Source: Podarcis muralis
Lineage: Eukaryota
Length of the DNA: 64,000 bases
Assembly (NCBI RefSeq): GCF_964188315.1
Contig: NC_135658.1
Coordinates: 42,718,001 to 42,782,000 of the forward strand
Reading direction: 5' to 3'
Part shown: piece by piece, positions 6,417 through 63,217 of the stretch
Position numbering within the stretch: position 1 is the stretch's first letter
Layout of the letters: each line of letters begins with the position of its first letter
Notes under the pieces: generated by a model
What the model was told of the DNA's origin: nothing
Database searches by the model: none
Seen by the model: only the letters and a program-made list of their open reading frames with translations
Translations under genes and position numbers: made by a program

Positions 6417-9400
6417 TGTAATGGCCTGGGACTTGGACTCAGACTTAGAACCAGAGGAGTCTCAGTCCGCACCAGATCCTTTGCCTCAGGCGGCATCTGG
6501 ACCAAGTCTGGGGCCTGATTCTGAAGAGACCCAGTCTGCACAGGTTCCCCTGCAACAAGCACCAGCAGGGCCAAGTCAGGGCCCTGAGCCTGCCCTGGCT
6601 CCAGATGCGGGAATTACCTATTTCCCTTCAGCTGGGCCATCACTTACAGCTGCTCCACTACCAGTTGGGTCAGGAGAGGCTGAGGTGGCCTCTGGGTCTA
6701 GTAACCAACCAACATCTCCCGAGCTGCAGAGACTAAGGTCTGAGAGAAGGAGAGACCTGAGTACTTGCAGGAGGAGTGCTCGCCTTTGGGAGAGACAGGG
6801 AGGTGAGTCACTGGGGGATCAGGACCAGCCGTTACCCCGTCAAAGATAAAAGGCTGTTGGACCCCGCCCCAGGTTGCGGGAGCAACAATTTTTTTTTTTT
6901 ATAATTTTTTATTAGAGATTTTTCTTATGGTTACAAAGATAAAACAAAACATGACAATACATTAAAACATAACAAACAAATAATAACAAGTATACTTTCA
7001 AATCTTATTTTCTTAAACCTTACTTCCCTGACTTCCTCATGCTTCCCCTTTCTGTGTTCCAATTTCTAATCAATTACTCAGCAAATCTTCTCGTATTTTA
7101 ACTTAATTTACTCATTTTTCTCCTTGTCTTAACCATTACCGCTATCAACCATTTATTTCACTAATCCATCATCCTTCTAAACTTCATAAATTTTGCAATA
7201 TTTCTTTAAATAGTCCTTAAATTTTCTCCACTCCTCCTCCGCTGCTTCTCTTCCCTGGTTTCGGATTCTGCTCGTCATCTCTGCTAGGACCATGTAGTCT
7301 ATCACCTTCATCTGCCATTCTTCCAAGGTGGGTAGATCTTGTGTCTTCCAGTACTTAGCGATGAGTATTCTTGCTGCTGTTGTAGCGTACATAAAAAAAG
7401 TCATATCCTTCTTTAACACCCCCTGGCCGACTATGCCCAAGAGAAAGGCCTCTGGTTTCTTTGGGAAGGTATATTTAAATACCTTTTTCAGTTCGTTATA
7501 TATCATTTCCCAGAATGCCTTAATCTTCGGGCACGTCCACCAGAGATGAAAGAACGTACCTTCATTTTCTTTACATTTCCAACATTTATTGTCAGGCAAA
7601 TGGTAAATCTTTGCAAGCTTGACTGGGGTCATGTACCACCTATAGATCATTTTCATAATATTTTCTCTTAGGGCGTTACACGCCGTGAACTTCATCCCGG
7701 TGGTCCACAACTTTTCCCAGTCAGCAAACATAATGTTATGCCCTATGTCCTGAGCCCATTTAATCATACTTGATTTGACCGTTTCATCCTGTGTATTCCA
7801 TTTCAACAGCAAGATGTACATTTTTGACAGATTTTTCTTACTGGGTTCTAACAATTCAGTTTCTAATTTTGATTTTTCCACCTGGAAGCCAATCTTACTA
7901 TCCATCTTAAAGGCCTCGTTTATTTGATGATAATGAAGCCAATCTCTCACTTTCTCTTTTAATTTCTAAAAACTCTGCAATTTCAGTTTATCCCCTTCCT
8001 TCTCCAAGATTTCCCAATATTTTGGCCACTTAGGCTCCATGTTTAACTTTTTAACTGCCTTAGCTTCCATTGGTGACAACCACCTTGGGGTTTTATTTTA
8101 TTGTTTTATTTTCCAACAAATCTTTATATCTGGTCCATACATTAAATAGTGCTTTTCTGACAATATGGTTTTTAAATCCTTTATGCGCTTTGACCTTGTC
8201 GTACCATAAATATGCATGCCACCCAAACGTATTATTGAAACCTTCCAAATCCAAGACATCTGTATTCTCAAGAAGTAGCCAATCCCTTAGCCAGCAAAAC
8301 GCTGCCGCTTCATAGTAAAGTTTAAAGTCTGGCAGGGCAAGTCCCCCCCTTTCCTTTGTATCTGTTAAGATCTTAAATTTTATTCTGGGCTTCTTGCCCT
8401 GCCAGACAAATTTAGATATATCTTTCTGCCACTTCTTAAAACAGTCCATCTTGTCTAGTATTTGCAATGCTTGGAACAAAAACAACATTCTTGGCAATAC
8501 ATTCATTTTTATAACTGCAATTCGACCCAACAAGGAAAGCTTCAAATTTGACCAAGTCTCTAGATCTCTTTTTACTTCTGTCCAAATTTTTTCATAATTG
8601 TCCTTAAATATGTTCACATTCTTCGTTGTCATATTTATCCCCAAATACTTCACTTTCTTAACCACAGTTAACCCTGTCACATTCTGAAACCTTTCTTTTT
8701 CAAACAATGTCATATTTTCCCCCAATACCTTAGTAAAAACTTAGTAAAAATTATTCAATTTAAATCCCGCCAGTTGACCAAACTCTTGAATTAATTCCAA
8801 AACCCTTTTCGTACTAGCTTCTGGCTCCTGCAGTGTAAGTACCAAGTCATCTGCAAATGCTCTCAATTTATATTGTTTTGCTCCGACCTGAATCCCTTTA
8901 ACCAACAGGTCTCCTCTGATCATATTTAGCAGAACCTCCAGGACTGAAATAAAAAGTAATGGAGAGATTGGGCACCCCTGACGTGTCCCTTTTTCTATCT
9001 TGAACTCTTCTGTAACAACGTTATTTACAATATTTTCGCTTTCTGCTCCGAGTATATGGCACCTATACCATTTTCAAACCCTTGGCCTACCCCCATCCCC
9101 CGGAGGTTCTTCATCATAAAACTCCAAGAAATGTTGTCGAAGGCTTTCTCAGCGTCTACAAATATCAACACTGCTTTGGTGTTTATATTCACCTCCAACT
9201 TTTCTAAAATGTCAATTATATTCCTTACATTATTCGACAAATGTCTTTTTGGGAGAAAGCCTGCTTGGTCCCCATGAATCTCCTCCATCAACACTCTTTT
9301 CAATCTCTTTGCTAAAATGTCCGCAAAAATTTTGTAATCCACATTCAATAATGAGATGGGACGGTAGTTCTTAAGTTGGGTCTTTTCAGTCTCTGTCTTT

Positions 9401-10098
9401 GGTATAAGTGTGATATAAGCCTCTCTCCACGTATCAGGTGCCTTTTTCCCTTCCATGATTTCATTACAAACTTCCTTCAAAGGTTTTATTAAGCATTCCT
9501 TCAAAACTTTATAATACTTGGAAGTCAATCCGTCCAGTCCTGGAGATTTGCCCAGCGTCATATTTTGAATGGCATCTTCTATTTCTTGTTCCGATATATC
9601 CTGATTCAACATTCTCTTACTTTCCTGAGAGATCTTTTTCAGTCCATTTTTCTCAAGGAATTGCTCTATTTCAGTTTCTTTCTGCGGCCCTTGTGAATAA
9701 AGTTGTCTAAAGTAGCTCTGAAAACAGTTTCTAATTTCCACTGGGTTACAAATATTCTTTCCATTCACTTCTAAACTTGTAACCGTGTTGAGTTTTTGTC
9801 TTTTCTTTATTTGCCAAGCCAATAACTTACCACATTTGTCTGCAGATTCAAAAATCTTTTGTCTCATTTGTTTAATTTTCCATTCTACTTCTTGATTCAT
9901 CATTTCCATAAACTGTGTTTGATATAATTTAATTTCTTTTAGAATCTCTTGCGATTTCGGTTTCGATCTTAGTTTCCTTTCCCCTTCTTTTATTTTTTCC
10001 AAAAATTTTTCTTTCTTCTCATTTTGACTTCTTTTTTTCAGAACAACATTGCGGGAGCAACATTGCTGTTTGCCAGAACCTGCCTGAGACCCTGCGCC
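6417..10098 (+). mobile_element. Second copy of the same LTR, split by an L1 (LTR parts 6417-6887 and 10049-10098), 3' end missing
   Basis: Starts TGTAATGG, colinear with 1184-1690; homology resumes after the L1 (gctgtttgccagaacctgcct) then stops near 10098. Confidence 0.85.
6888..10048 (-). mobile_element. 5'-truncated L1-clade LINE (ORF2 RT and C-terminal CCHC; endonuclease absent), frameshifted
   Basis: ORF pieces 9025-10002, 8741-8923, 8093-8725, 7177-7950 give YRPISLLNVDYK, DAEKAFD, AFADD, CWKC..HLWWTC; AATAAA and poly(A) at the 6888 end; 14-bp TSD TTGCGGGAGCAACA (6874-6887 and 10049-10062). Confidence 0.95.
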
Positions 10099-16679: not shown

Positions 16680-17789
16680 TCACACGGACAGGTCATCAGA
16701 GCGAGCTTTACTGCTGGCGCGGCTGGTTTTGCTGAGCCTACGTTTGTCATGGAAGTAGCCATTGGGAACCAGGGTGGGTGTGGAGCTATTGGCGGCCTCC
16801 GAAGCCTGAGAATAGTTAACTTGGATAAATGGCGCTTCCCTGTCTGCGTCGTCTTGGTTGTGAACCCTCTCCGTTGCAAAATTGGCAGTGTTCTGCTGAG
16901 AGGCCATTTTGTTGCTGAAGGGACTGATAAATTTTCCACCAGGGTTGGCCAAACACTGATTAAAATCTGGAGGAGGGGTACAGCTTTGGATCATCTTTGC
17001 TTGGGGGTCTGTTTCCAGTTTGCTGGCGACTGGGCTGGGGCTGCGTTTGTAAGAAGGGGAGAACTTCTGCTTGGCTTTCTTCCATCCCAAGTGATATAGT
17101 TCAGCCAGGCTTAAGAACAGGGAGAGTGCTGCTACGGCCAGCATGAAAATGATAAAGATGTTCTTCTCAGTTGGCCGAGAGACGTAGCAGTTGACTGGAT
17201 GGGGGCAAGGCTTCCGTTGACAGATATAGAGCGTCTCAAGGAAGATTCCATACAGCATGTACTGCCCAATGATGAATGCTACCTCCATGGTGGTACGGAT
17301 TAAAATGCTGCAGACGTAGGTGTTCAACAAAGTGCCTTGAAGAATGATCCTCCCACTTGGCTCATCCCAGCAGGACAGCTCCGCCTTCTCGGGCGCTTGG
17401 TACTCCTGCTGGTGGAAAGAATCTCCCTTGCTCTGAATTGCTGTCGCCGCTTCTTTGGCCTCCTTTAGCTTCCTCTTCTCCTCCATGCGCACTGTGTGCA
17501 TTGCATGTCCCATGTACAGCAGGGAAGGGGTGGAGACAAAGATGATCTGAAGGACCCAGTACCTGATGTGGGAGATGGGGAAAGCTTTGTCGTAGCAGAC
17601 GTTCTCGCAACCCGGTTGCCGGGTGTCACACATGAAGTCGGACTGTTCATCTCCCCACGAAGACTCTGCGGCTGTGCCCAGGACAAGCATCCGGAAGATA
17701 AAGAGCACGGTCAGCCAGACTTTCCCCACCACTGTGGAATGCTTGTGGACTTCCTCCAGGAATTCTCCTAGGAAGCTCCAGTCACCCAT
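16680..17789 (-). CDS. GJA5: Gap junction alpha-5 protein (connexin 40), 369 aa, single coding exon
   Basis: ORF starts [49 protein letters not shown], has all six extracellular cysteines ([12 protein letters not shown]; [12 protein letters not shown]), the Cx40-type [10 protein letters not shown] and MASQQNT motifs, and ends [14 protein letters not shown]. Confidence 0.97.
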
Positions 17790-45112: not shown

Positions 45113-45160
45113 AAACAAACAAACAAACAAACAAACAAACAAACAAACAAACAAACAAAC
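45113..45160. repeat. (AAAC)n microsatellite
   Basis: Directly visible. Confidence 0.95.
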
Positions 45161-45224: not shown

Positions 45225-45461
45225 CAGTGGTACCTCGGGTTAAGAACTTAATTCGTTCTGGAGGTCCATTCTTAACCTGAAACTGTTCTTAACCTGAAGC
45301 ACCACTTTAGCTAATGGGGCCTCCCGCTGCCGCTGTGGCTGCGCGATTTCTGTTCTCATCCTGAAGCAAAGTTCTTAACCCGAGGTACTATTTCTGGGTT
45401 AGCAGAGTCTGTAACCTGAAGCGTCTGTAACCTGAAGCGTCTGTAACCTGAGGTACCTCTG
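45225..45461. mobile_element. Tc1/mariner MITE, same family
   Basis: TA|CAGTGGTACCTCGGG...GAGGTACCTCTG|TA. Confidence 0.85.
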
Positions 45462-45528
45462 TACTACCAAAGAGCTATGTTTTCCCCACCAGGGCAGGAA
45501 GCTTCTGCAGAGAAATCCTCAAAACATT

Positions 45529-45566
45529 GTATCTGAAGAAGTGTGCATGCACACGAAAGCTCATAC
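45529..45566 (+). ncRNA. Minimal type-I hammerhead ribozyme (Penelope-like element), copy 1
   Basis: GUAU-CUGAAGA-A-GUGUGC-AU-GCACAC-GAAA-GC-UC/AUAC: core boxes CUGANGA and GAAA, 6-bp helix II, helix I GUAU:AUAC, predicted cleavage after C45562. Confidence 0.8.
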
Positions 45567-45623
45567 CAAGAACTAACTTAGTTGGTCTTTAAGGTGCTAC
45601 TGGAAGGAATTTTTTGTCAAAAC
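45529..45623 (+). mobile_element. Penelope-like retroelement terminal-repeat fragment
   Basis: 87 nt identical to 48430-48516; hammerhead followed by ...taaggtgctactgga, recognised from memory as typical of squamate Penelope-like termini. Confidence 0.65.
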
Positions 45624-45760
45624 ATCCTGTTTGCTTGACTTCTAGAAAACAACTACCATGAAATCTTCATCCTGCCATCATCTCTCCTACGATAATAATG
45701 GGACTGAGACCATTGAAAGGAGAGGTTGGAACTGCTCCCTGGAGAAGTCCCTTGCAAAAT

Positions 45761-45967
45761 CAGTGGTACCTTGGGTTAAGAACTTAATTCGTTCTGGAGG
45801 TCCATTCTTAACCTGAAACTGTTCTTAACCTGAAGCACCACTTTAGATAATGGGGCCTCCCGCTGCGATTTCTGTTCTCATCTTGAAGCAAAGTTCTTAA
45901 CCCGAGGTACTATTTCTGGGTTGGCGGAGTCTGTAACCTGAAGCGTCTGTAACTCGAGGTACCACTG
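45761..45967. mobile_element. Tc1/mariner MITE, same family, TSD decayed
   Basis: CAGTGGTACC...GGTACCACTG, colinear with 45225. Confidence 0.8.
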
Positions 45968-46480
45968 TGTATCACTGAGCTGCAGAATATCCCCAGGCTG
46001 GCAGGGAGCATGTGCCCAGCTTAGTCCTCATCAACAACACCTCCTCGTTGACTTTTAACACTTCCTTATCACTTGCTGGTTCACCTCCCAGAGGTTCTGA
46101 TTAAATGCCATCCCCAGTGGAATCTCCTGACCCAGTCTCTTGAGAATGCAACAGCTTTAGAGGTGGAACTGAAGCTTCCTAGCCTGGAAAGGGAATGATC
46201 CCTGTGGGTGGTTGGGAGCAATATGATCCATCTTCCTGTACCGCAGGATACTTAAAGTATCGTTGTCTTTATATCCACTTTTTAACTTCCAGTGATGGAC
46301 ACAGACAACTTCCCTAGGCATTTTGTTTCATCGTACAGCTATATTTCTTGTCTCCCACTAACTGTATTCACATCAACCGGGAGGGTTTGGCTTTGTTACT
46401 TTCACATTCTCCTACTTTACCCTTCATGCTCTACTCTTGTAAATCTCTTCATACTCTTTGGCATAAAATAATCGCCCCCT

Positions 46481-46880
46481 CATAGAATCATAGACTTGTA
46501 GAGCTAGAAGGGACCCTGAGGGTCATCTAGTCTAACCCCCTGCAAGGCAGGTATCTCAACCAAATCACCCATGACAGATGGCCATCCAACCTCTGCTTAA
46601 AACCTCCCAAGGAAGGAGAGTCCACAACCTCCCAAGGGAGACTGTTCCACTGTCAAACAGCTCTTCCTGTCAGGAAGTTCTTTCTGGTGTTTCATTGGAA
46701 TCTTCTTTCTTGTAACTTGAATCCATTGGTTTGGTTCCTACCCTCCAGAGCAAGAGAAAATAAGCTTGCTCCATCTTCCCTGTGACAGCCCTTGAGATAT
46801 TTGAAGATGGCTATCATATCTCCTCTCAGTCTCCTCTTTCCCAGACTAAACATACCCAGTTCCCTCAACTGTTCCTCATA
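46481..46880 (-). mobile_element. CR1 LINE 3' end
   Basis: Minus ORF YEEQLRELGMFSLGKRRLRGDMIAIFKYLKGCH (CR1 ORF2 C-terminus) and (ATTCTATG)-type tail catagaatcatag. Confidence 0.85.
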
Positions 46881-47571
46881 ATGCACTTAAACTGCAGTGC
46901 TTTGCGCACTTTTCTGGGAGCAAGCCCCATTGAATATTTGCTCTGTGGGCAATGGCCTTCTGTTTTTTCCAAACCAAGTTTTTTCTCTCTAAAAAAAATA
47001 ATAATGCAACTTTTATGGTTCCAATGCCATTGAAACCCAGTGGTGAACTCTTATTAAACATACACAAATCCAATTGCAAATATCACCTCTTAAATCATAT
47101 CAAATTTGCAACACAGCCAGTAGTCTAAATCTTGGATGAATGGGCTTGCAGGGGGGGAAAGTCCTAACAGTACAATCCTGTGCTTTTATGTAAGGCCTAC
47201 TCTGAAGTAAATTCACTGGAACTTACTTTCAGGTAGCTGTGTATAGGATTGCAGCCAAAGTTAATTTAGGATAGACATGTAGATCTAAATACATGGCTGG
47301 ATTTATGTAAGGGAGCACATGGATTCCAATGGACATTCAGTAAACTGATCAAAGGACTTTGTAAGCCTTTGTACATTGCCTGTCATTCCAAAAATGTATG
47401 AGGGCTGTAAAAAGGGATGGCTCCCAATATGCTTAGTTATTAATCATCCTCCCAGATATAGGTGGCATATCAGGTTGCATTGACCCAGTAGAATATATGA
47501 TAGCACATTTGCTGGAACTATGAAGGCAAAGCTGATTTTAAGATATTTGTAAAAGGAGAACAGAACACTGT

Positions 47572-47631
<60 letters not shown>

Positions 47632-47939
47632 CTGGTCTCTTCAGCTGCTTGGCCTGAAAATGGAAAGCCCAAAGCATTTCGAATTCCTGGAGTCTTTTGT
47701 CGCTAATGCTTTGCAGGAGGCTTTACTGAGCACCAAGCATCTGGGAGAAATTACAGGAATGTTCTCTTGTCTGCATAGATTTAGGGGAATGGTGCCACTG
47801 GGTGGAAGGGTCAAGAAGAAGGTGGAAATGGACAAGAGAATGAAGGAAGCAGGAAGGAGAGAGACAACTGTCAGCAGAACGAAGAAATAAAGGAAGCGAA
47901 AGTAATTCAAATCACAGCAAACATAAGACAGATGTAAAA

Positions 47940-48092
47940 AGGGCTTTTTCAGGGGGAATTCACAGGAACTTGGTTCCGGCACCTCTCAGGTGAGTTCTGG
48001 AGCCTCTCAGGTGGGAGCCATTGCCATTCTAAGAGAAGGAGGTGGTGTTCACGGTGAATTCTGGAATCTCTTTTTCTAAAAAAACAGCAATG
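47940..48092. mobile_element. hAT-like MITE with related termini
   Basis: agggctttttcag...ttccggcacctctcaggtg...tttctaaaaaaacagcaatg. Confidence 0.55.
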
Positions 48093-48429
48093 GATGTAAG
48101 AGTGGTAAAAAGCAGTCAAGAGGCAAGAAAAGATAAGGAACCAAGAGTCAAAAAGATGAATTTTAATATAAGCCTAATTTTACAGATTAATTAAAAAGAA
48201 TCATGCCTGGCGTCCTTCCGAAATTCAAAGCAATTTAAGAGAAAAAGCAGATCATATTTGAATTCACTTAAAATATCTAAGTATTGTTCCATGTTCCCCA
48301 CTTCTCTCAGCGATGAAAAGTTTTCATGGTAGTCCTACAGGTTTTAATTCTTTTGTTGAAAAAGCACTGGCGGTGTTTTTCTAATATTGATTTACAAGCA
48401 TACAAGCAGAACATGGTGGAAACAAAGCA

Positions 48430-48467
48430 GTATCTGAAGAAGTGTGCATGCACACGAAAGCTCATAC
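48430..48467 (+). ncRNA. Minimal type-I hammerhead ribozyme (Penelope-like element), copy 2
   Basis: Identical to copy 1; predicted cleavage after C48463. Confidence 0.8.
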
Positions 48468-48560
48468 CAAGAACTAACTTAGTTGGTCTTTAAGGTGCTA
48501 CTGGAAGGAATTTTTTTTGTTTTGACTATGGCAGACCAACACGGCTACCTATCTGTAACT
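48430..48560 (+). mobile_element. Penelope-like retroelement terminal-repeat fragment (longer copy)
   Basis: Same 87 nt plus continuation gttttgactatggcagaccaacacggctacc. Confidence 0.65.
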
Positions 48561-48877
48561 AGTACTCCAACAGCAGGCTGCAAATTTGCTAATCTTGTAT
48601 TAGAGTCCAAAGAGCACCCAATATGTTTCATCTTTAGCCCAGTGACAGTTCTTTACATTATCTGTATTTCTGTATCTGTTTTTTCCTAAGTTCAATCTAC
48701 AAACAGGTTTTTAACTGTTTCTGTGCCACCTCCCACTAGCTGGGGGATGTCCTCTCCTCCAAACTCAAGGCTGGAGAGAGATTCCCCGCAATCAGATGGA
48801 CATCTGTTGTTTACTCCCATTGCTAACTGTCTGATGGGATTCTAAGAAGGAGGTAAATATATAAGTTCTTGTATAAC

Positions 48878-61860: not shown

Positions 61861-61920
61861 CTTCTTTTGAAATGCGACATGTGCTGAATATATTAAAACC
61901 CTTCTTTATATAATGCAACT

Positions 61921-61945
61921 TAATCATTGTCTTCCTCTTAAACAG
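61921..61945 (+). promoter_or_regulatory. Splice acceptor of the GJA8 coding exon (exon begins 61946, 6 nt before ATG)
   Basis: cattgtcttcctcttaaacAG|ccagaaATG; connexin alpha genes have a non-coding exon 1 and a coding exon 2. Confidence 0.75.
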
Positions 61946-61951
61946 CCAGAA

Positions 61952-63217
61952 ATGGGTGACTGGAGTTTCTTGGGGAACATTTTAGAAGAGGTGAATGAAC
62001 AATCCACGGTCATTGGGAGAGTCTGGCTGACTGTCCTCTTCATTTTTCGGATCCTAATCCTTGGGACTGCTGCAGAATTTGTATGGGGAGACGAACAGTC
62101 AGATTTTGTGTGCAACACCCAGCAGCCAGGTTGTGAAAATGTGTGCTACGACGAGGCCTTCCCCATCTCCCACATCCGACTGTGGGTCCTGCAGATCATC
62201 TTTGTCTCCACTCCCTCGCTGGTTTATTTGGGCCATGCTGCGCATCATGTAAGGATGGAAGAGAAAAGGAAAGAGCGGGAAGAAGCAGAGAGGGCTCAGC
62301 AAGCTGCGGCACACGAAGAAAACTCACCCCTTGATCCAGACCGGAAGAGCCCTATAACCACGAGAGAAGCAAGCTCCAAGGGGACCAAAAAGTTCCACCT
62401 CGAGGGAACGCTCCTGAGAACCTATATTTGCCACATCTTTTTCAAAACCCTTTTTGAGGTGGGGTTCATAGTGGGCCAGTACTTCTTATATGGCTTCCGA
62501 ATTCTTCCGCTTTACCGCTGTGGCAGATGGCCTTGCCCCAACCTCGTGGACTGTTTTGTGTCCAGGCCTACCGAAAAGACTGTTTTCATTGTGTTTATGC
62601 TGGCTGTGGCATCAGTCTCTCTCTTCCTCAATCTTGTGGAGATCAGCCACTTAGGCTTTAAGAAGATCCTGGGTGCTTTCAGGAGGCCAGTGGAGCAAGA
62701 GCCTCAGGAGACCCCAGAGAAACCCCTTCATTCTATCGCGGTTTCGTCTATCCAGAAGGTCAAAGGCTACAAGTTGCTGGAGGAAGAGGAGAAGCCGACG
62801 TTCCACTATTTCCCTTTGACCGAAGTGGGAGTAGAAACCACCCCAGTTCCCCCCTCATTCAACGACTTTGAGGAGAAGATCAGCATGGAACGCCTGAAAG
62901 ACCTTTCCAGGGCCTTGGGGGAGCACCTGCCTTCCTACGCTCATGCGGATGAACAGGAGGAGGAGAAAGTTGAAGCAGGAGAGGAGCCGGAACAGGAAGT
63001 GGCTGAGGCGGCGGCCCAGGAACAGAGGGTGGAACTGGTGACTGAGGAAGCCCCAGAGAAAGGAGAAGATGACAAGCATATGGAGGAGGAACAAGAGCCA
63101 GAGCCGCCGGGAGAGGACTTGCCTTTACCATCCGCTGATTTTAACACTGACACAAGACCCCTCAGCAGGTTAAGCAAAGCCAGTAGTCGTGCCAGGTCAG
63201 ATGATCTGACTGTATGA
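61952..63217 (+). CDS. GJA8: Gap junction alpha-8 protein (connexin 50), 421 aa, single coding exon
   Basis: [78 protein letters not shown]; KGYKLLEEE and HYFPLTEVG motifs, Glu-rich tail, ends [20 protein letters not shown]; divergent from GJA5 as in other amniotes. Start placed at the family-conserved Met, 13 codons into the listed ORF. Confidence 0.97.

What the first reader, a model, noticed from the sequence alone, without database searches (positions are those of the whole stretch)
45529..45566. Complete minimal hammerhead ribozyme hidden in a Penelope-like fragment between GJA5 and GJA8
Seen: GTAT CTGAAGA A GTGTGC AT GCACAC GAAA GC TC ATAC. This maps onto a type-I hammerhead: C3-A9 = CUGAAGA, one extra A, helix II GUGUGC:GCACAC, G12-A15.1 = GAAA, U16.1-C17 cleavage site (after 45562), helix I GUAU:AUAC (extendable to UUGUAU:AUACCAA with a bulge). 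Helix III is reduced to the palindrome AGCU, and helix II is also a palindrome. Established: Penelope-like retroelements carry minimal hammerheads with vestigial palindromic helix III that cleave as dimers. Inference: this is a potentially active self-cleaving RNA on the GJA8 sense strand that no ORF track shows.
Basis: partly seen in the sequence, partly recalled or inferred. Interest (0 to 1): 0.85.

Follow-up and report, generated by a model that had tools for sequence, protein, structure and literature searches.

The report
Penelope-type minimal hammerhead in short retroposon
The motif is a real minimal hammerhead ribozyme of the well-known Penelope-retrotransposon type, but this copy is one of roughly ten thousand in the lizard genome and sits in DNA that was not transcribed in the samples checked, so it is ordinary.

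Summary
The sequence is exactly as described at 45529-45566 (+). An identical copy lies at 48430-48467. A structural descriptor finds only these two sites in the window, against 0.005 expected per shuffled window.

The motif has every conserved hammerhead core base. It also has four traits published for Penelope-like-element (PLE) minimal hammerheads:
- one unpaired base between A9 and G10.1
- a G10.1-C11.1 pair opening a 6-bp helix II
- a 4-bp helix I
- a palindromic GC at 15.2/16.2

It shares its architecture with the experimentally tested Anolis Poseidon hammerhead.

Copy 1 is a discrete 89-nt insertion with a 9-nt target-site duplication. Copy 2 carries about 46 extra 3' bases, which may be a PLE "tail". 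No RT or GIY-YIG ORF lies beside or between the copies.

DNA depth suggests about 10^4 copies in the genome. The scan holds 90 other hammerhead/Penelope notes on this genome.

In two stranded RNA-seq runs the unique flanks have zero depth. Reads on the element come equally from both strands, and no read ends pile up at the predicted cut.

Verdict: a solo, recently inserted PLE-derived unit with an intact but probably idle, dimer- or protein-dependent ribozyme. It is a new member of a known kind and of low interest.

The parts
45529..45566 (+). Minimal type-I hammerhead motif, copy 1 (the finding). Helix I is 45529-32 paired with 45563-66. The core C3-A9 is 45533-39, with an unpaired A at 45540. 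Helix II is 45541-46 paired with 45549-54, loop 45547-48. G12-A15.1 is 45555-58, the G15.2/C16.2 palindrome is 45559-60, and U16.1-C17 is 45561-62. The predicted cut is after 45562.
   Evidence: architecture compared
45528..45616 (+). Inserted unit of copy 1, 89 nt with edges uncertain by 1 nt. It runs from the hammerhead at its 5' edge to a T6 run (45610-15) plus G.
   Evidence: It is 100% identical to 48430-48516 over 87 nt. It is bounded by a target-site duplication.
45519..45527 (.). Left copy of the 9-nt target-site duplication TCAAAACAT. The 5' junction reads ...CATT|GTAT.
   Evidence: Random 87-nt intervals in the window give a flanking repeat of at least 8 nt in 0.03% of trials.
45617..45625 (.). 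Right copy of the 9-nt target-site duplication TCAAAACAT.
48430..48467 (+). Identical hammerhead motif, copy 2. The predicted cut is after 48463.
48430..48566 (+). Longer unit of copy 2, about 137 nt. The 3' end is approximate, and no target-site duplication longer than 4 nt was found.
   Evidence: The high-copy DNA/RNA depth ends before 48601, and a unique contig starts at 48537.
48521..48566 (+). A 3' extension present in copy 2 only, about 46 nt. It contains the AC-rich GACCAACACGG at 48534-44. It is a candidate PLE 'tail', meaning the stretch between two alternative reverse-transcription start sites. This is an inference.
   Evidence: compared with the Poseidon_Ac data. Its fold is not exceptional.

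Best explanation
The motif is the hammerhead ribozyme module of a short, very abundant retroposon derived from a Penelope-like element (PLE). In effect it is a solo pseudo-LTR fragment, or a non-autonomous unit, copied by a PLE reverse transcriptase/endonuclease.

The likely history of copy 1 is as follows. An RNA that began at the first base of helix I was reverse transcribed from an internal start site just after the T-run. It was inserted at an AT-rich target (..CATT|) and produced a 9-nt target-site duplication. Copy 2 is the same unit primed about 46 nt further 3', in an AC-rich stretch (the 'tail' form).

The ribozyme core is intact, but helix III is only the palindrome AGCU. Cleavage after C17 would therefore need either two copies pairing AGCU with AGCU (a double hammerhead) or the element's own protein. 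Both conditions are reported for this class.

Both sides of the scissile bond are present in every inserted copy, so the template RNAs were uncleaved when copied.

At this locus the element is a passive, recently inserted, untranscribed passenger between GJA5 and GJA8. It has no evident role for those genes.

Shown here: the motif, the identical second copy, the target-site duplication, the high copy number, and the lack of local RNA and of cut-site read ends. Inferred: mobilisation by a PLE, the tail interpretation, and the dimer or protein dependence.
For: The motif is exact, occurs twice in the window, and is far above chance.

It shows class-specific traits that were not part of my descriptor. 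These are an unpaired base between positions 9 and 10.1, a G10.1-C11.1 pair, a 6-bp helix II, a 4-bp helix I and a palindromic 15.2/16.2. Cervera & de la Pena 2014 list them as the hallmarks of PLE minimal hammerheads, which they also found in reptiles.

The layout matches the Anolis Poseidon_Ac hammerhead: CUGAGGA, U, a 6-bp helix II, GAAA, CG, UC. That ribozyme's cleavage was confirmed with C3G and G8C mutants.

In Poseidon_Ac, reverse transcription starts in an AC-rich stretch (..CAACAC..) 83-88 nt 3' of the cut, and the endonuclease prefers ATT. Here CAACAC lies 74-79 nt 3' of the cut in copy 2, and the 5' junction of copy 1 is ..CATT|.

Copy 1 has an exact 9-nt target-site duplication, with P of about 3e-4.

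The two copies are 100% identical over 87 nt but have unrelated flanks.

DNA word depth on the element is about 0.36-2.0 million, against about 17-140 in unique DNA.

All sampled 31-mers of the unit occur in runs of 7 organism labels.

RNA depth is zero in all unique bins. Reads on the element come about equally from both strands in a library that is clearly stranded on the neighbouring CR1 fragment. No positions show piled read ends.

The literature reports low, dimer- or protein-dependent activity for this class. For Poseidon_Ac it also reports no RNA-seq read ends at the cut site.
Against: No RT or GIY-YIG ORF lies next to or between the copies, so the Penelope link was not shown directly.

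There is no Rfam hammerhead hit, even at E<=10.

Only two identical copies could be read, so covariation in helices I and II could not be tested.

Copy 2 has no recognisable target-site duplication.

The shared, fixed 5' edge is not what random 5' truncation of a PLE would give.

The 'tail' here is about 46 nt, against the published 30-40 nt. Its fold is unremarkable.

The tissues of the two RNA runs are unknown. Lens or heart transcription of the locus is therefore not excluded.
Confidence: 0.8

Rival explanations
1. The unit is a monomer of a non-LTR 'retrozyme'. That is a tandem-repeat, circular-RNA-forming hammerhead element, rather than a fragment of a PLE pseudo-LTR. In this reading the dispersed 89-137-nt copies are dead offspring of tandem master arrays. 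Their transcripts self-cleave as dimers, circularise and are reverse transcribed.
For: The unit length (89-137 nt) lies within the range reported for vertebrate retrozyme families (51-972 bp), though below the reptile average of 176 bp. Dispersed monomers are common in such families. Some genomic contigs elsewhere show a hammerhead followed 25-37 nt later by another hammerhead start (table 5c). A fixed 5' edge next to the reverse-transcription start would follow from one round of copying on a unit-length circle.
Against: There is no tandem arrangement at this locus. The two copies are 2,901 bp apart, with single-copy DNA, a SINE and a CR1 fragment between them. No read ends occur at the cut site. 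The 2026 preprint argues that retrozymes are themselves non-autonomous PLE derivatives, so this is more a sub-case than a true rival.
Confidence: 0.12
2. The hammerhead is functionally engaged at this locus. It would act either as a cis-acting cleavage device in a GJA8-sense transcript or as a long-range dimer between the two identical copies 2.9 kb apart.
For: Both copies are on the GJA8 sense strand and are intact. AGCU and helix II are palindromes, so two copies can pair.
Against: RNA depth is zero in every unique bin between and around the copies in two RNA-seq runs. Copy 1 is an independent insertion with its own target-site duplication. The same unit occurs about 10^4 times in the genome. 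The double-hammerhead pairing is energetically no better than two monomers, and an inactive helix-II duplex is favoured by about 18 kcal/mol.
Confidence: 0.03
3. The hammerhead-like string is incidental. In this reading the element's template strand is the minus strand. Its fixed 3' end would be the complement of GTATCTG..., with variable 5' truncation at the T-run or tail side. The + strand motif would then never be part of the element's RNA.
For: Both copies share exactly the same edge at G45529/G48430 and differ at the other end. That is the pattern expected of a 5'-truncated retroelement read on the minus strand. RNA reads show no strand preference. The monomer fold is not exceptional, with z = -0.26.
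Against: A 38-nt string meeting all core and class-specific hammerhead constraints is expected 0.005 times per window by chance. Its layout relative to an AC-rich stretch and an ATT target mirrors Poseidon_Ac on the + strand. Alternative 3' ends are a documented PLE property, the tail. The minus-strand 3' end has no known LINE or SINE tail signature.
Confidence: 0.05

Closest known systems
Minimal hammerhead ribozymes of Penelope-like elements (Cervera & de la Pena 2014, PMC4209133; Lunse, Weinberg & Breaker 2017, cited in PMC6765202)
   Same: It is type I and has the full CUGANGA...GAAA...UH core. It has one unpaired base between 9 and 10.1, a G10.1-C11.1 pair, a long helix II (6 bp) and a short helix I (4 bp). 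Helix III is reduced to A15.1-U16.1 around a palindromic dinucleotide. It occurs mostly as solo copies spread through the genome. The class was reported in reptiles.
   Different: This particular sequence family was not found in any text I could search. No compensatory variation could be examined. No PLE ORF is adjacent.
Poseidon_Ac (PAc) hammerhead of Anolis carolinensis (Mob DNA 2024, PMC11167929)
   Same: It is also a squamate PLE with the same module order: core, one unpaired base, a 6-bp helix II, GAAA, a 2-nt palindrome, then UC. An AC-rich ..CAACAC.. stretch lies about 75-90 nt 3' of the cut, where PAc starts reverse transcription. Genomic copies have alternative 3' ends (the tail). The target is AT-rich with ATT. 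No RNA-seq read ends occur at the cut site.
   Different: Outside the core the primary sequence is unrelated. In PAc the ORF start codon opens stem II and continues for 847 codons. Here an ATG in loop II (45547) opens only 9 codons, so the unit is non-coding. The helix II loop is 2-4 nt here and 7 nt in PAc. The palindrome is GC here and CG in PAc.
Non-LTR retrozymes of animals (Cervera & de la Pena 2020, PMC7229834; Li et al. 2026 preprint)
   Same: These are short non-coding units carrying one type-I hammerhead with a weak helix III. They are related to PLE pseudo-LTRs, absent from birds and mammals, present in reptiles, and have frequent dispersed monomers.
   Different: Retrozymes are defined by tandem repeats and circular RNA. 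This locus has single dispersed copies, and no circular RNA evidence was obtained.
Schistosome Sm-alpha/Sj-alpha SINE-like hammerhead retroposons and newt satellite 2
   Same: They are high-copy short retroposed or satellite units. Their type-I hammerhead has a helix III too short to work as a monomer.
   Different: Those have canonical loop-loop tertiary contacts and a 2-bp helix III with a loop. Sm-alpha has a Pol III promoter. None of these features was identified here.

Membership tests
Hammerhead ribozyme (catalytic core) | C3 U4 G5 A6 N7 G8 A9 box | tested here: met
   CTGAAGA at 45533-39 and at 48434-40
Hammerhead ribozyme (catalytic core) | G12 A13 A14, A15.1-U16.1 and a non-G base at position 17 | tested here: met
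   GAA at 45555-57, A at 45558, U at 45561 and C at 45562
Hammerhead ribozyme (catalytic core) | Three helices around the core, with a stable helix III in cis | tested here: not met
   Helix I (4 bp) and helix II (6 bp) are present. Helix III is only A15.1-U16.1 enclosing GC, which cannot close as a hairpin. It would need AGCU:AGCU pairing in trans.
Hammerhead ribozyme (catalytic core) | Match to a curated Rfam hammerhead covariance model | tested here: not met
   No hit at the gathering score on the window. No hit at E<=10 on 45300-45800.
Hammerhead ribozyme (catalytic core) | Mg2+-dependent self-cleavage after position 17 | not testable with these tools
   The only indirect evidence is that no read ends pile up at 45563 or 48464 in two RNA-seq runs (table 6). 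This is weak evidence.
PLE minimal hammerhead (Cervera & de la Pena 2014) | [quoted passage not shown] | tested here: met
   A at 45540; criterion
PLE minimal hammerhead (Cervera & de la Pena 2014) | G10.1-C11.1 pair, long helix II (6-8 bp) and short helix I (4-5 bp) | tested here: met
   G45541-C45554; helix II is 6 bp and helix I is 4 bp; criteria
PLE minimal hammerhead (Cervera & de la Pena 2014) | Palindromic 15.2-16.2 / loop 3, allowing a dimeric helix III | tested here: met
   GC at 45559-60 makes AGCU self-complementary. The double-hammerhead pairing can be drawn but scores only -11.1 kcal/mol.
PLE minimal hammerhead (Cervera & de la Pena 2014) | Family-wide compensatory changes in helices I and II | not testable with these tools
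   Only two identical copies are in the window. Public metagenome and viral scans gave only chance hits.
Penelope-like element (insertion) | Pseudo-LTRs flanking one ORF with telomerase-like RT and GIY-YIG endonuclease | tested here: not met
   No such ORF lies between or beside the copies. The only RT in the window is an L1-like RVT_1 at 9025-10002 (-). The interval is single-copy DNA plus a SINE and a CR1 fragment. This is therefore a solo fragment, as is the case for most copies reported in the literature.
Penelope-like element (insertion) | Optional 30-40-bp tail, internal reverse-transcription start in an AC-rich stretch, and an AT-rich (ATT) target | tested here: inconclusive
   Copy 2 is about 46 nt longer at the 3' end than copy 1 and carries GACCAACACGG. 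The 5' junction of copy 1 is CATT|G. This is only an analogy with PAc. The fold of the extension is unremarkable.
Non-LTR retrozyme | Head-to-tail tandem repeats, each with a type-I hammerhead, and circular RNA | tested here: not met
   The copies are dispersed, 2,901 bp apart. Tandem-like joints are seen only in contigs from elsewhere in the genome (table 5c). Circular RNA was not tested.

The most novel reading that the evidence does not exclude
The family may be a dedicated SINE-like parasite of Penelope elements, 89-137 nt long. Its RNA would always begin at the first base of helix I and be primed at one of two internal sites. It has reached about 10^4 copies. In it the hammerhead would be kept as a folding or recognition module for the PLE protein, and cleavage would be incidental. 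Every inserted copy spans the scissile bond, which fits this reading.
Probability: 0.2. Interest if true: 0.4.

Novelty: new member of a known kind. Interest (0 to 1): 0.15.

Why it matters
It matters little for this locus. The motif is a correct example of a ribozyme class that has been catalogued in metazoan genomes, reptiles included, since 2014. A close squamate counterpart has already been tested biochemically.

Its modest value is as a clean, dated example:
- It is an 89-nt insertion with a perfect target-site duplication.
- It retains both sides of the scissile bond.
- It starts exactly at helix I.

This fits the published view that uncleaved RNA is the substrate for PLE insertion. It also points to a very abundant non-autonomous derivative in this lizard lineage. 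The family could serve for a genome-wide covariation test of what the PLE hammerhead is conserved for.

Tried and rejected
- **Rfam scans.** Neither the gathering-threshold scan nor the permissive scan gave a hammerhead hit.
- **Folding statistics.** The monomer, the tail and the whole unit all have z-scores between -0.26 and +1.14. This gives no thermodynamic support, although a 38-nt minimal hammerhead is not expected to stand out.
- **An older, diverged copy of the same family as the target of copy 1** (PLEs tend to insert into PLEs). A by-eye resemblance of the flanks did not survive a local-alignment test. The score was 14, against a shuffle mean of 15. Rejected.
- **More diverged copies in the window.** blastn with word size 7, nhmmer and a relaxed descriptor found none.
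- **A target-site duplication for copy 2.** Nothing longer than 4 nt was found.
- **Family members in public metagenome and viral contigs.** I used a pattern that left helix II free. It gave four chance hits without helix II pairing or homology, and none in the viral contigs.
- **A PLE ORF between the two copies.** The 2,901-bp spacing resembles a PLE unit length. Pfam found nothing on ten ORFs, and the DNA depth shows single-copy sequence. The spacing is a coincidence.
- **Full-text search for the sequence strings.** No paper matched.
- **Literature not available.** Lunse et al. 2017 is not held. No supplements are held for Cervera 2014.

Full report
**Observation.** In standard hammerhead numbering the assignment is:
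- C3-A9 = 45533-39
- an extra A at 45540
- helix II = 45541-46 paired with 45549-54, opened by G10.1-C11.1
- G12-A14 = 45555-57
- A15.1 = 45558
- G15.2/C16.2 = 45559-60
- U16.1 = 45561
- C17 = 45562
- helix I = 45529-32 paired with 45563-66

The predicted cut is after 45562. A descriptor I wrote for minimal type-I hammerheads hits only this site and an identical one at 48430-48467 on the same strand. In 400 dinucleotide-preserving shuffles of the window it hits 0.005 times per window. It never hits when the helix III filler must be palindromic.

One detail does not hold. The proposed extension of helix I uses two flank bases of copy 1 that copy 2 lacks.

**What surrounds it.** The two sites share a 100% identical 87-nt direct repeat, 45529-45615 and 48430-48516. 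The repeat begins exactly at the first base of helix I, and the flanks are unrelated.

Copy 1 is bounded by an exact 9-nt duplication, TCAAAACAT, at 45519-27 and 45617-25. Random 87-nt intervals of this window show a flanking repeat of at least 8 nt in 0.03% of trials. Copy 1 is therefore a discrete 89-nt insertion with a target-site duplication.

Copy 2 continues for about 46 nt past the T-run (48521 to about 48566) and includes GACCAACACGG. It has no recognisable target-site duplication.

No other copies, intact or decayed, are in the window.

Between the copies lie a SINE (45761-45968), a CR1-like fragment (about 46421-46965, minus strand), microsatellites and single-copy DNA. Ten ORFs from this interval have no RT or GIY-YIG signal. 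The PLE-like spacing of 2,901 bp is therefore a coincidence.

Cx40/GJA5 lies at 16680-17789 (-) and Cx50/GJA8 at 61913-63217 (+).

**Abundance and expression.** I laid two RNA-seq runs (raw reads) and two DNA runs (contigs) of the same species on 45440-48700.
- *DNA depth.* Word depth on the element is about 0.36-2.0 million, against about 17-140 on unique stretches. The tool warns that this is not a copy number. As an order of magnitude it means about 10^4 copies.
- *Agreement with the family.* No high-share alternative letter was listed inside either copy, so the copies match the family majority. The caveat is that 278 rows were not shown.
- *RNA on unique DNA.* Every unique bin has depth 0 (45985-46420, 46966-47183, 47293-47837, 48165-48382, 48601-48700). 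The locus is not transcribed in those samples.
- *RNA on the element.* Reads fall about equally in both directions (73/56, 154/156, 204/220). The neighbouring CR1 fragment is 4- to 23-fold biased across its bins, so the library is stranded. The element reads therefore come from copies passively embedded in other transcripts.
- *Read ends.* The tool found no place where many molecules begin or end, so nothing piles up at 45563 or 48464.
- *Other species.* All eight sampled 31-mers of the 137-nt unit are held by runs of seven organism labels.
- *Earlier notes.* The scan's notebook holds 90 notes on hammerhead/Penelope motifs in this same genome.

**Comparison with what is known.** Cervera & de la Pena (2014) defined minimal hammerheads in the pseudo-LTRs of Penelope-like elements. 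[quoted passage not shown] They found such motifs mostly as solo copies, also in turtle and snakes. In vitro activity was very low and seen only in dimers. The present motif meets all four traits.

The Repbase Poseidon_Ac consensus from Anolis is printed in the supplement of the 2024 Mobile DNA paper. It gives a squamate hammerhead with the same module order: CUGAGGA, U, a 6-bp helix II, GAAA, CG, UC. The cut is 26 nt after the start codon, as the paper states. That paper reports the following:
- The ribozyme cleaves only when the PLE protein is present.
- Ribozyme mutants do not affect insertion.
- No RNA-seq reads end at the cut.
- Reverse transcription starts internally in an AC-rich stem-loop, which by my count lies 83-88 nt 3' of the cut.
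- Genomic copies end at two alternative sites separated by the 30-40-bp "tail".
- The endonuclease prefers ATT.

Here CAACAC lies 74-79 nt 3' of the cut. The two copies end about 46 nt apart, and the 5' junction of copy 1 is CATT|G. These parallels are analogies, not tests, and primary sequence outside the core is unrelated. An ATG in loop II (45547) opens only nine codons, so the unit is non-coding.

**Mechanism.**
- The monomer cannot close helix III. Its minimum free energy is -6.8 kcal/mol, with z = -0.26.
- The double-hammerhead pairing has AGCU:AGCU and helix I in trans, with helix II hairpins kept. It scores -11.1 kcal/mol, no better than two monomers (-13.6).
- A duplex through the 14-nt palindrome of helix II scores about -29 to -30.6 kcal/mol and is catalytically meaningless.
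- Nearest-neighbour energies ignore tertiary contacts and proteins. Even so, they agree with the weak, assisted activity reported for the class.
- Every inserted copy contains both sides of the scissile bond, so the template RNA was uncleaved at that site when it was copied.

**Verdict.** The best-supported explanation (0.8) is a solo, recently inserted, non-coding PLE-derived unit. Its hammerhead is intact but idle at this locus.

The rivals are:
- a retrozyme monomer (0.12), which is a sub-case since retrozymes are argued to derive from PLE pseudo-LTRs
- a locus-specific or two-copy cis device (0.03)
- a minus-strand element with an incidental motif (0.05)

The direct link to a PLE ORF and covariation in the helices could not be tested with the data available.

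This is a new member of a known kind, found many times in this genome. It deserves low interest.

Noticed in passing
window 45225-45462 and 45761-45968: Two copies of a SINE, 97-98% identical, bracket the 297-bp segment that holds hammerhead copy 1. This SINE has by far the highest DNA and RNA depth in the stretch, roughly 10 to 15 times the hammerhead unit. Contigs from elsewhere in the genome join a SINE end directly to a SINE start (table 5: 45463 to 45761), so SINE dimers are common in this genome.
   Followed up: partly
window 46421-46965 (-): A CR1-like LINE 3' fragment. The ORF at 46692-46886 has the typical ...LGMFSLGKRRLRGDMI..YLKG... tail but no Pfam hit. RNA reads on it are strongly strand-biased (up to 1994 against 173). 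That bias showed the RNA libraries are stranded.
   Followed up: partly
window 45529-45561, as seen in DNA contigs from elsewhere in the genome (table 5c): Some contigs show the hammerhead followed, after only 25-37 other letters, by another hammerhead start ('goes back' joints from 45558/45561 to 45528/45529). One spacer itself looks like a decayed hammerhead. Compact tandem or dimeric arrangements of this unit therefore exist at other loci.
   Followed up: no
window 45547-45576 (+): An ATG in the helix II loop opens a 9-codon frame (MHTKAHTKN, then stop). In Anolis Poseidon_Ac the PLE ORF starts at stem II of its hammerhead. This may be a vestige of that arrangement in a non-coding derivative.
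   Followed up: partly
window 48510-48518 and 45610-45615: The T-run of the unit is length-polymorphic. It is T6 in copy 1 and T8 in copy 2, and indels appear in family reads at 48510-11 (table 4). Copy 1 ends right after this run, which would also act as a Pol III terminator. The possibility of Pol III transcription was not examined further.
   Followed up: no
window 7177-10002 (-): Three consecutive ORFs (257, 210 and 325 aa) of an L1-like LINE. RVT_1 scores 1.5e-16 on 9025-10002. This is the only reverse transcriptase in the window, and it is not of the Penelope type.
   Followed up: partly
window 45113-45160 and about 47540-47600: A (CAAA)n microsatellite lies just upstream of the SINE, and a (CT)n(CA)n run lies between the two hammerhead copies.
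   Followed up: no
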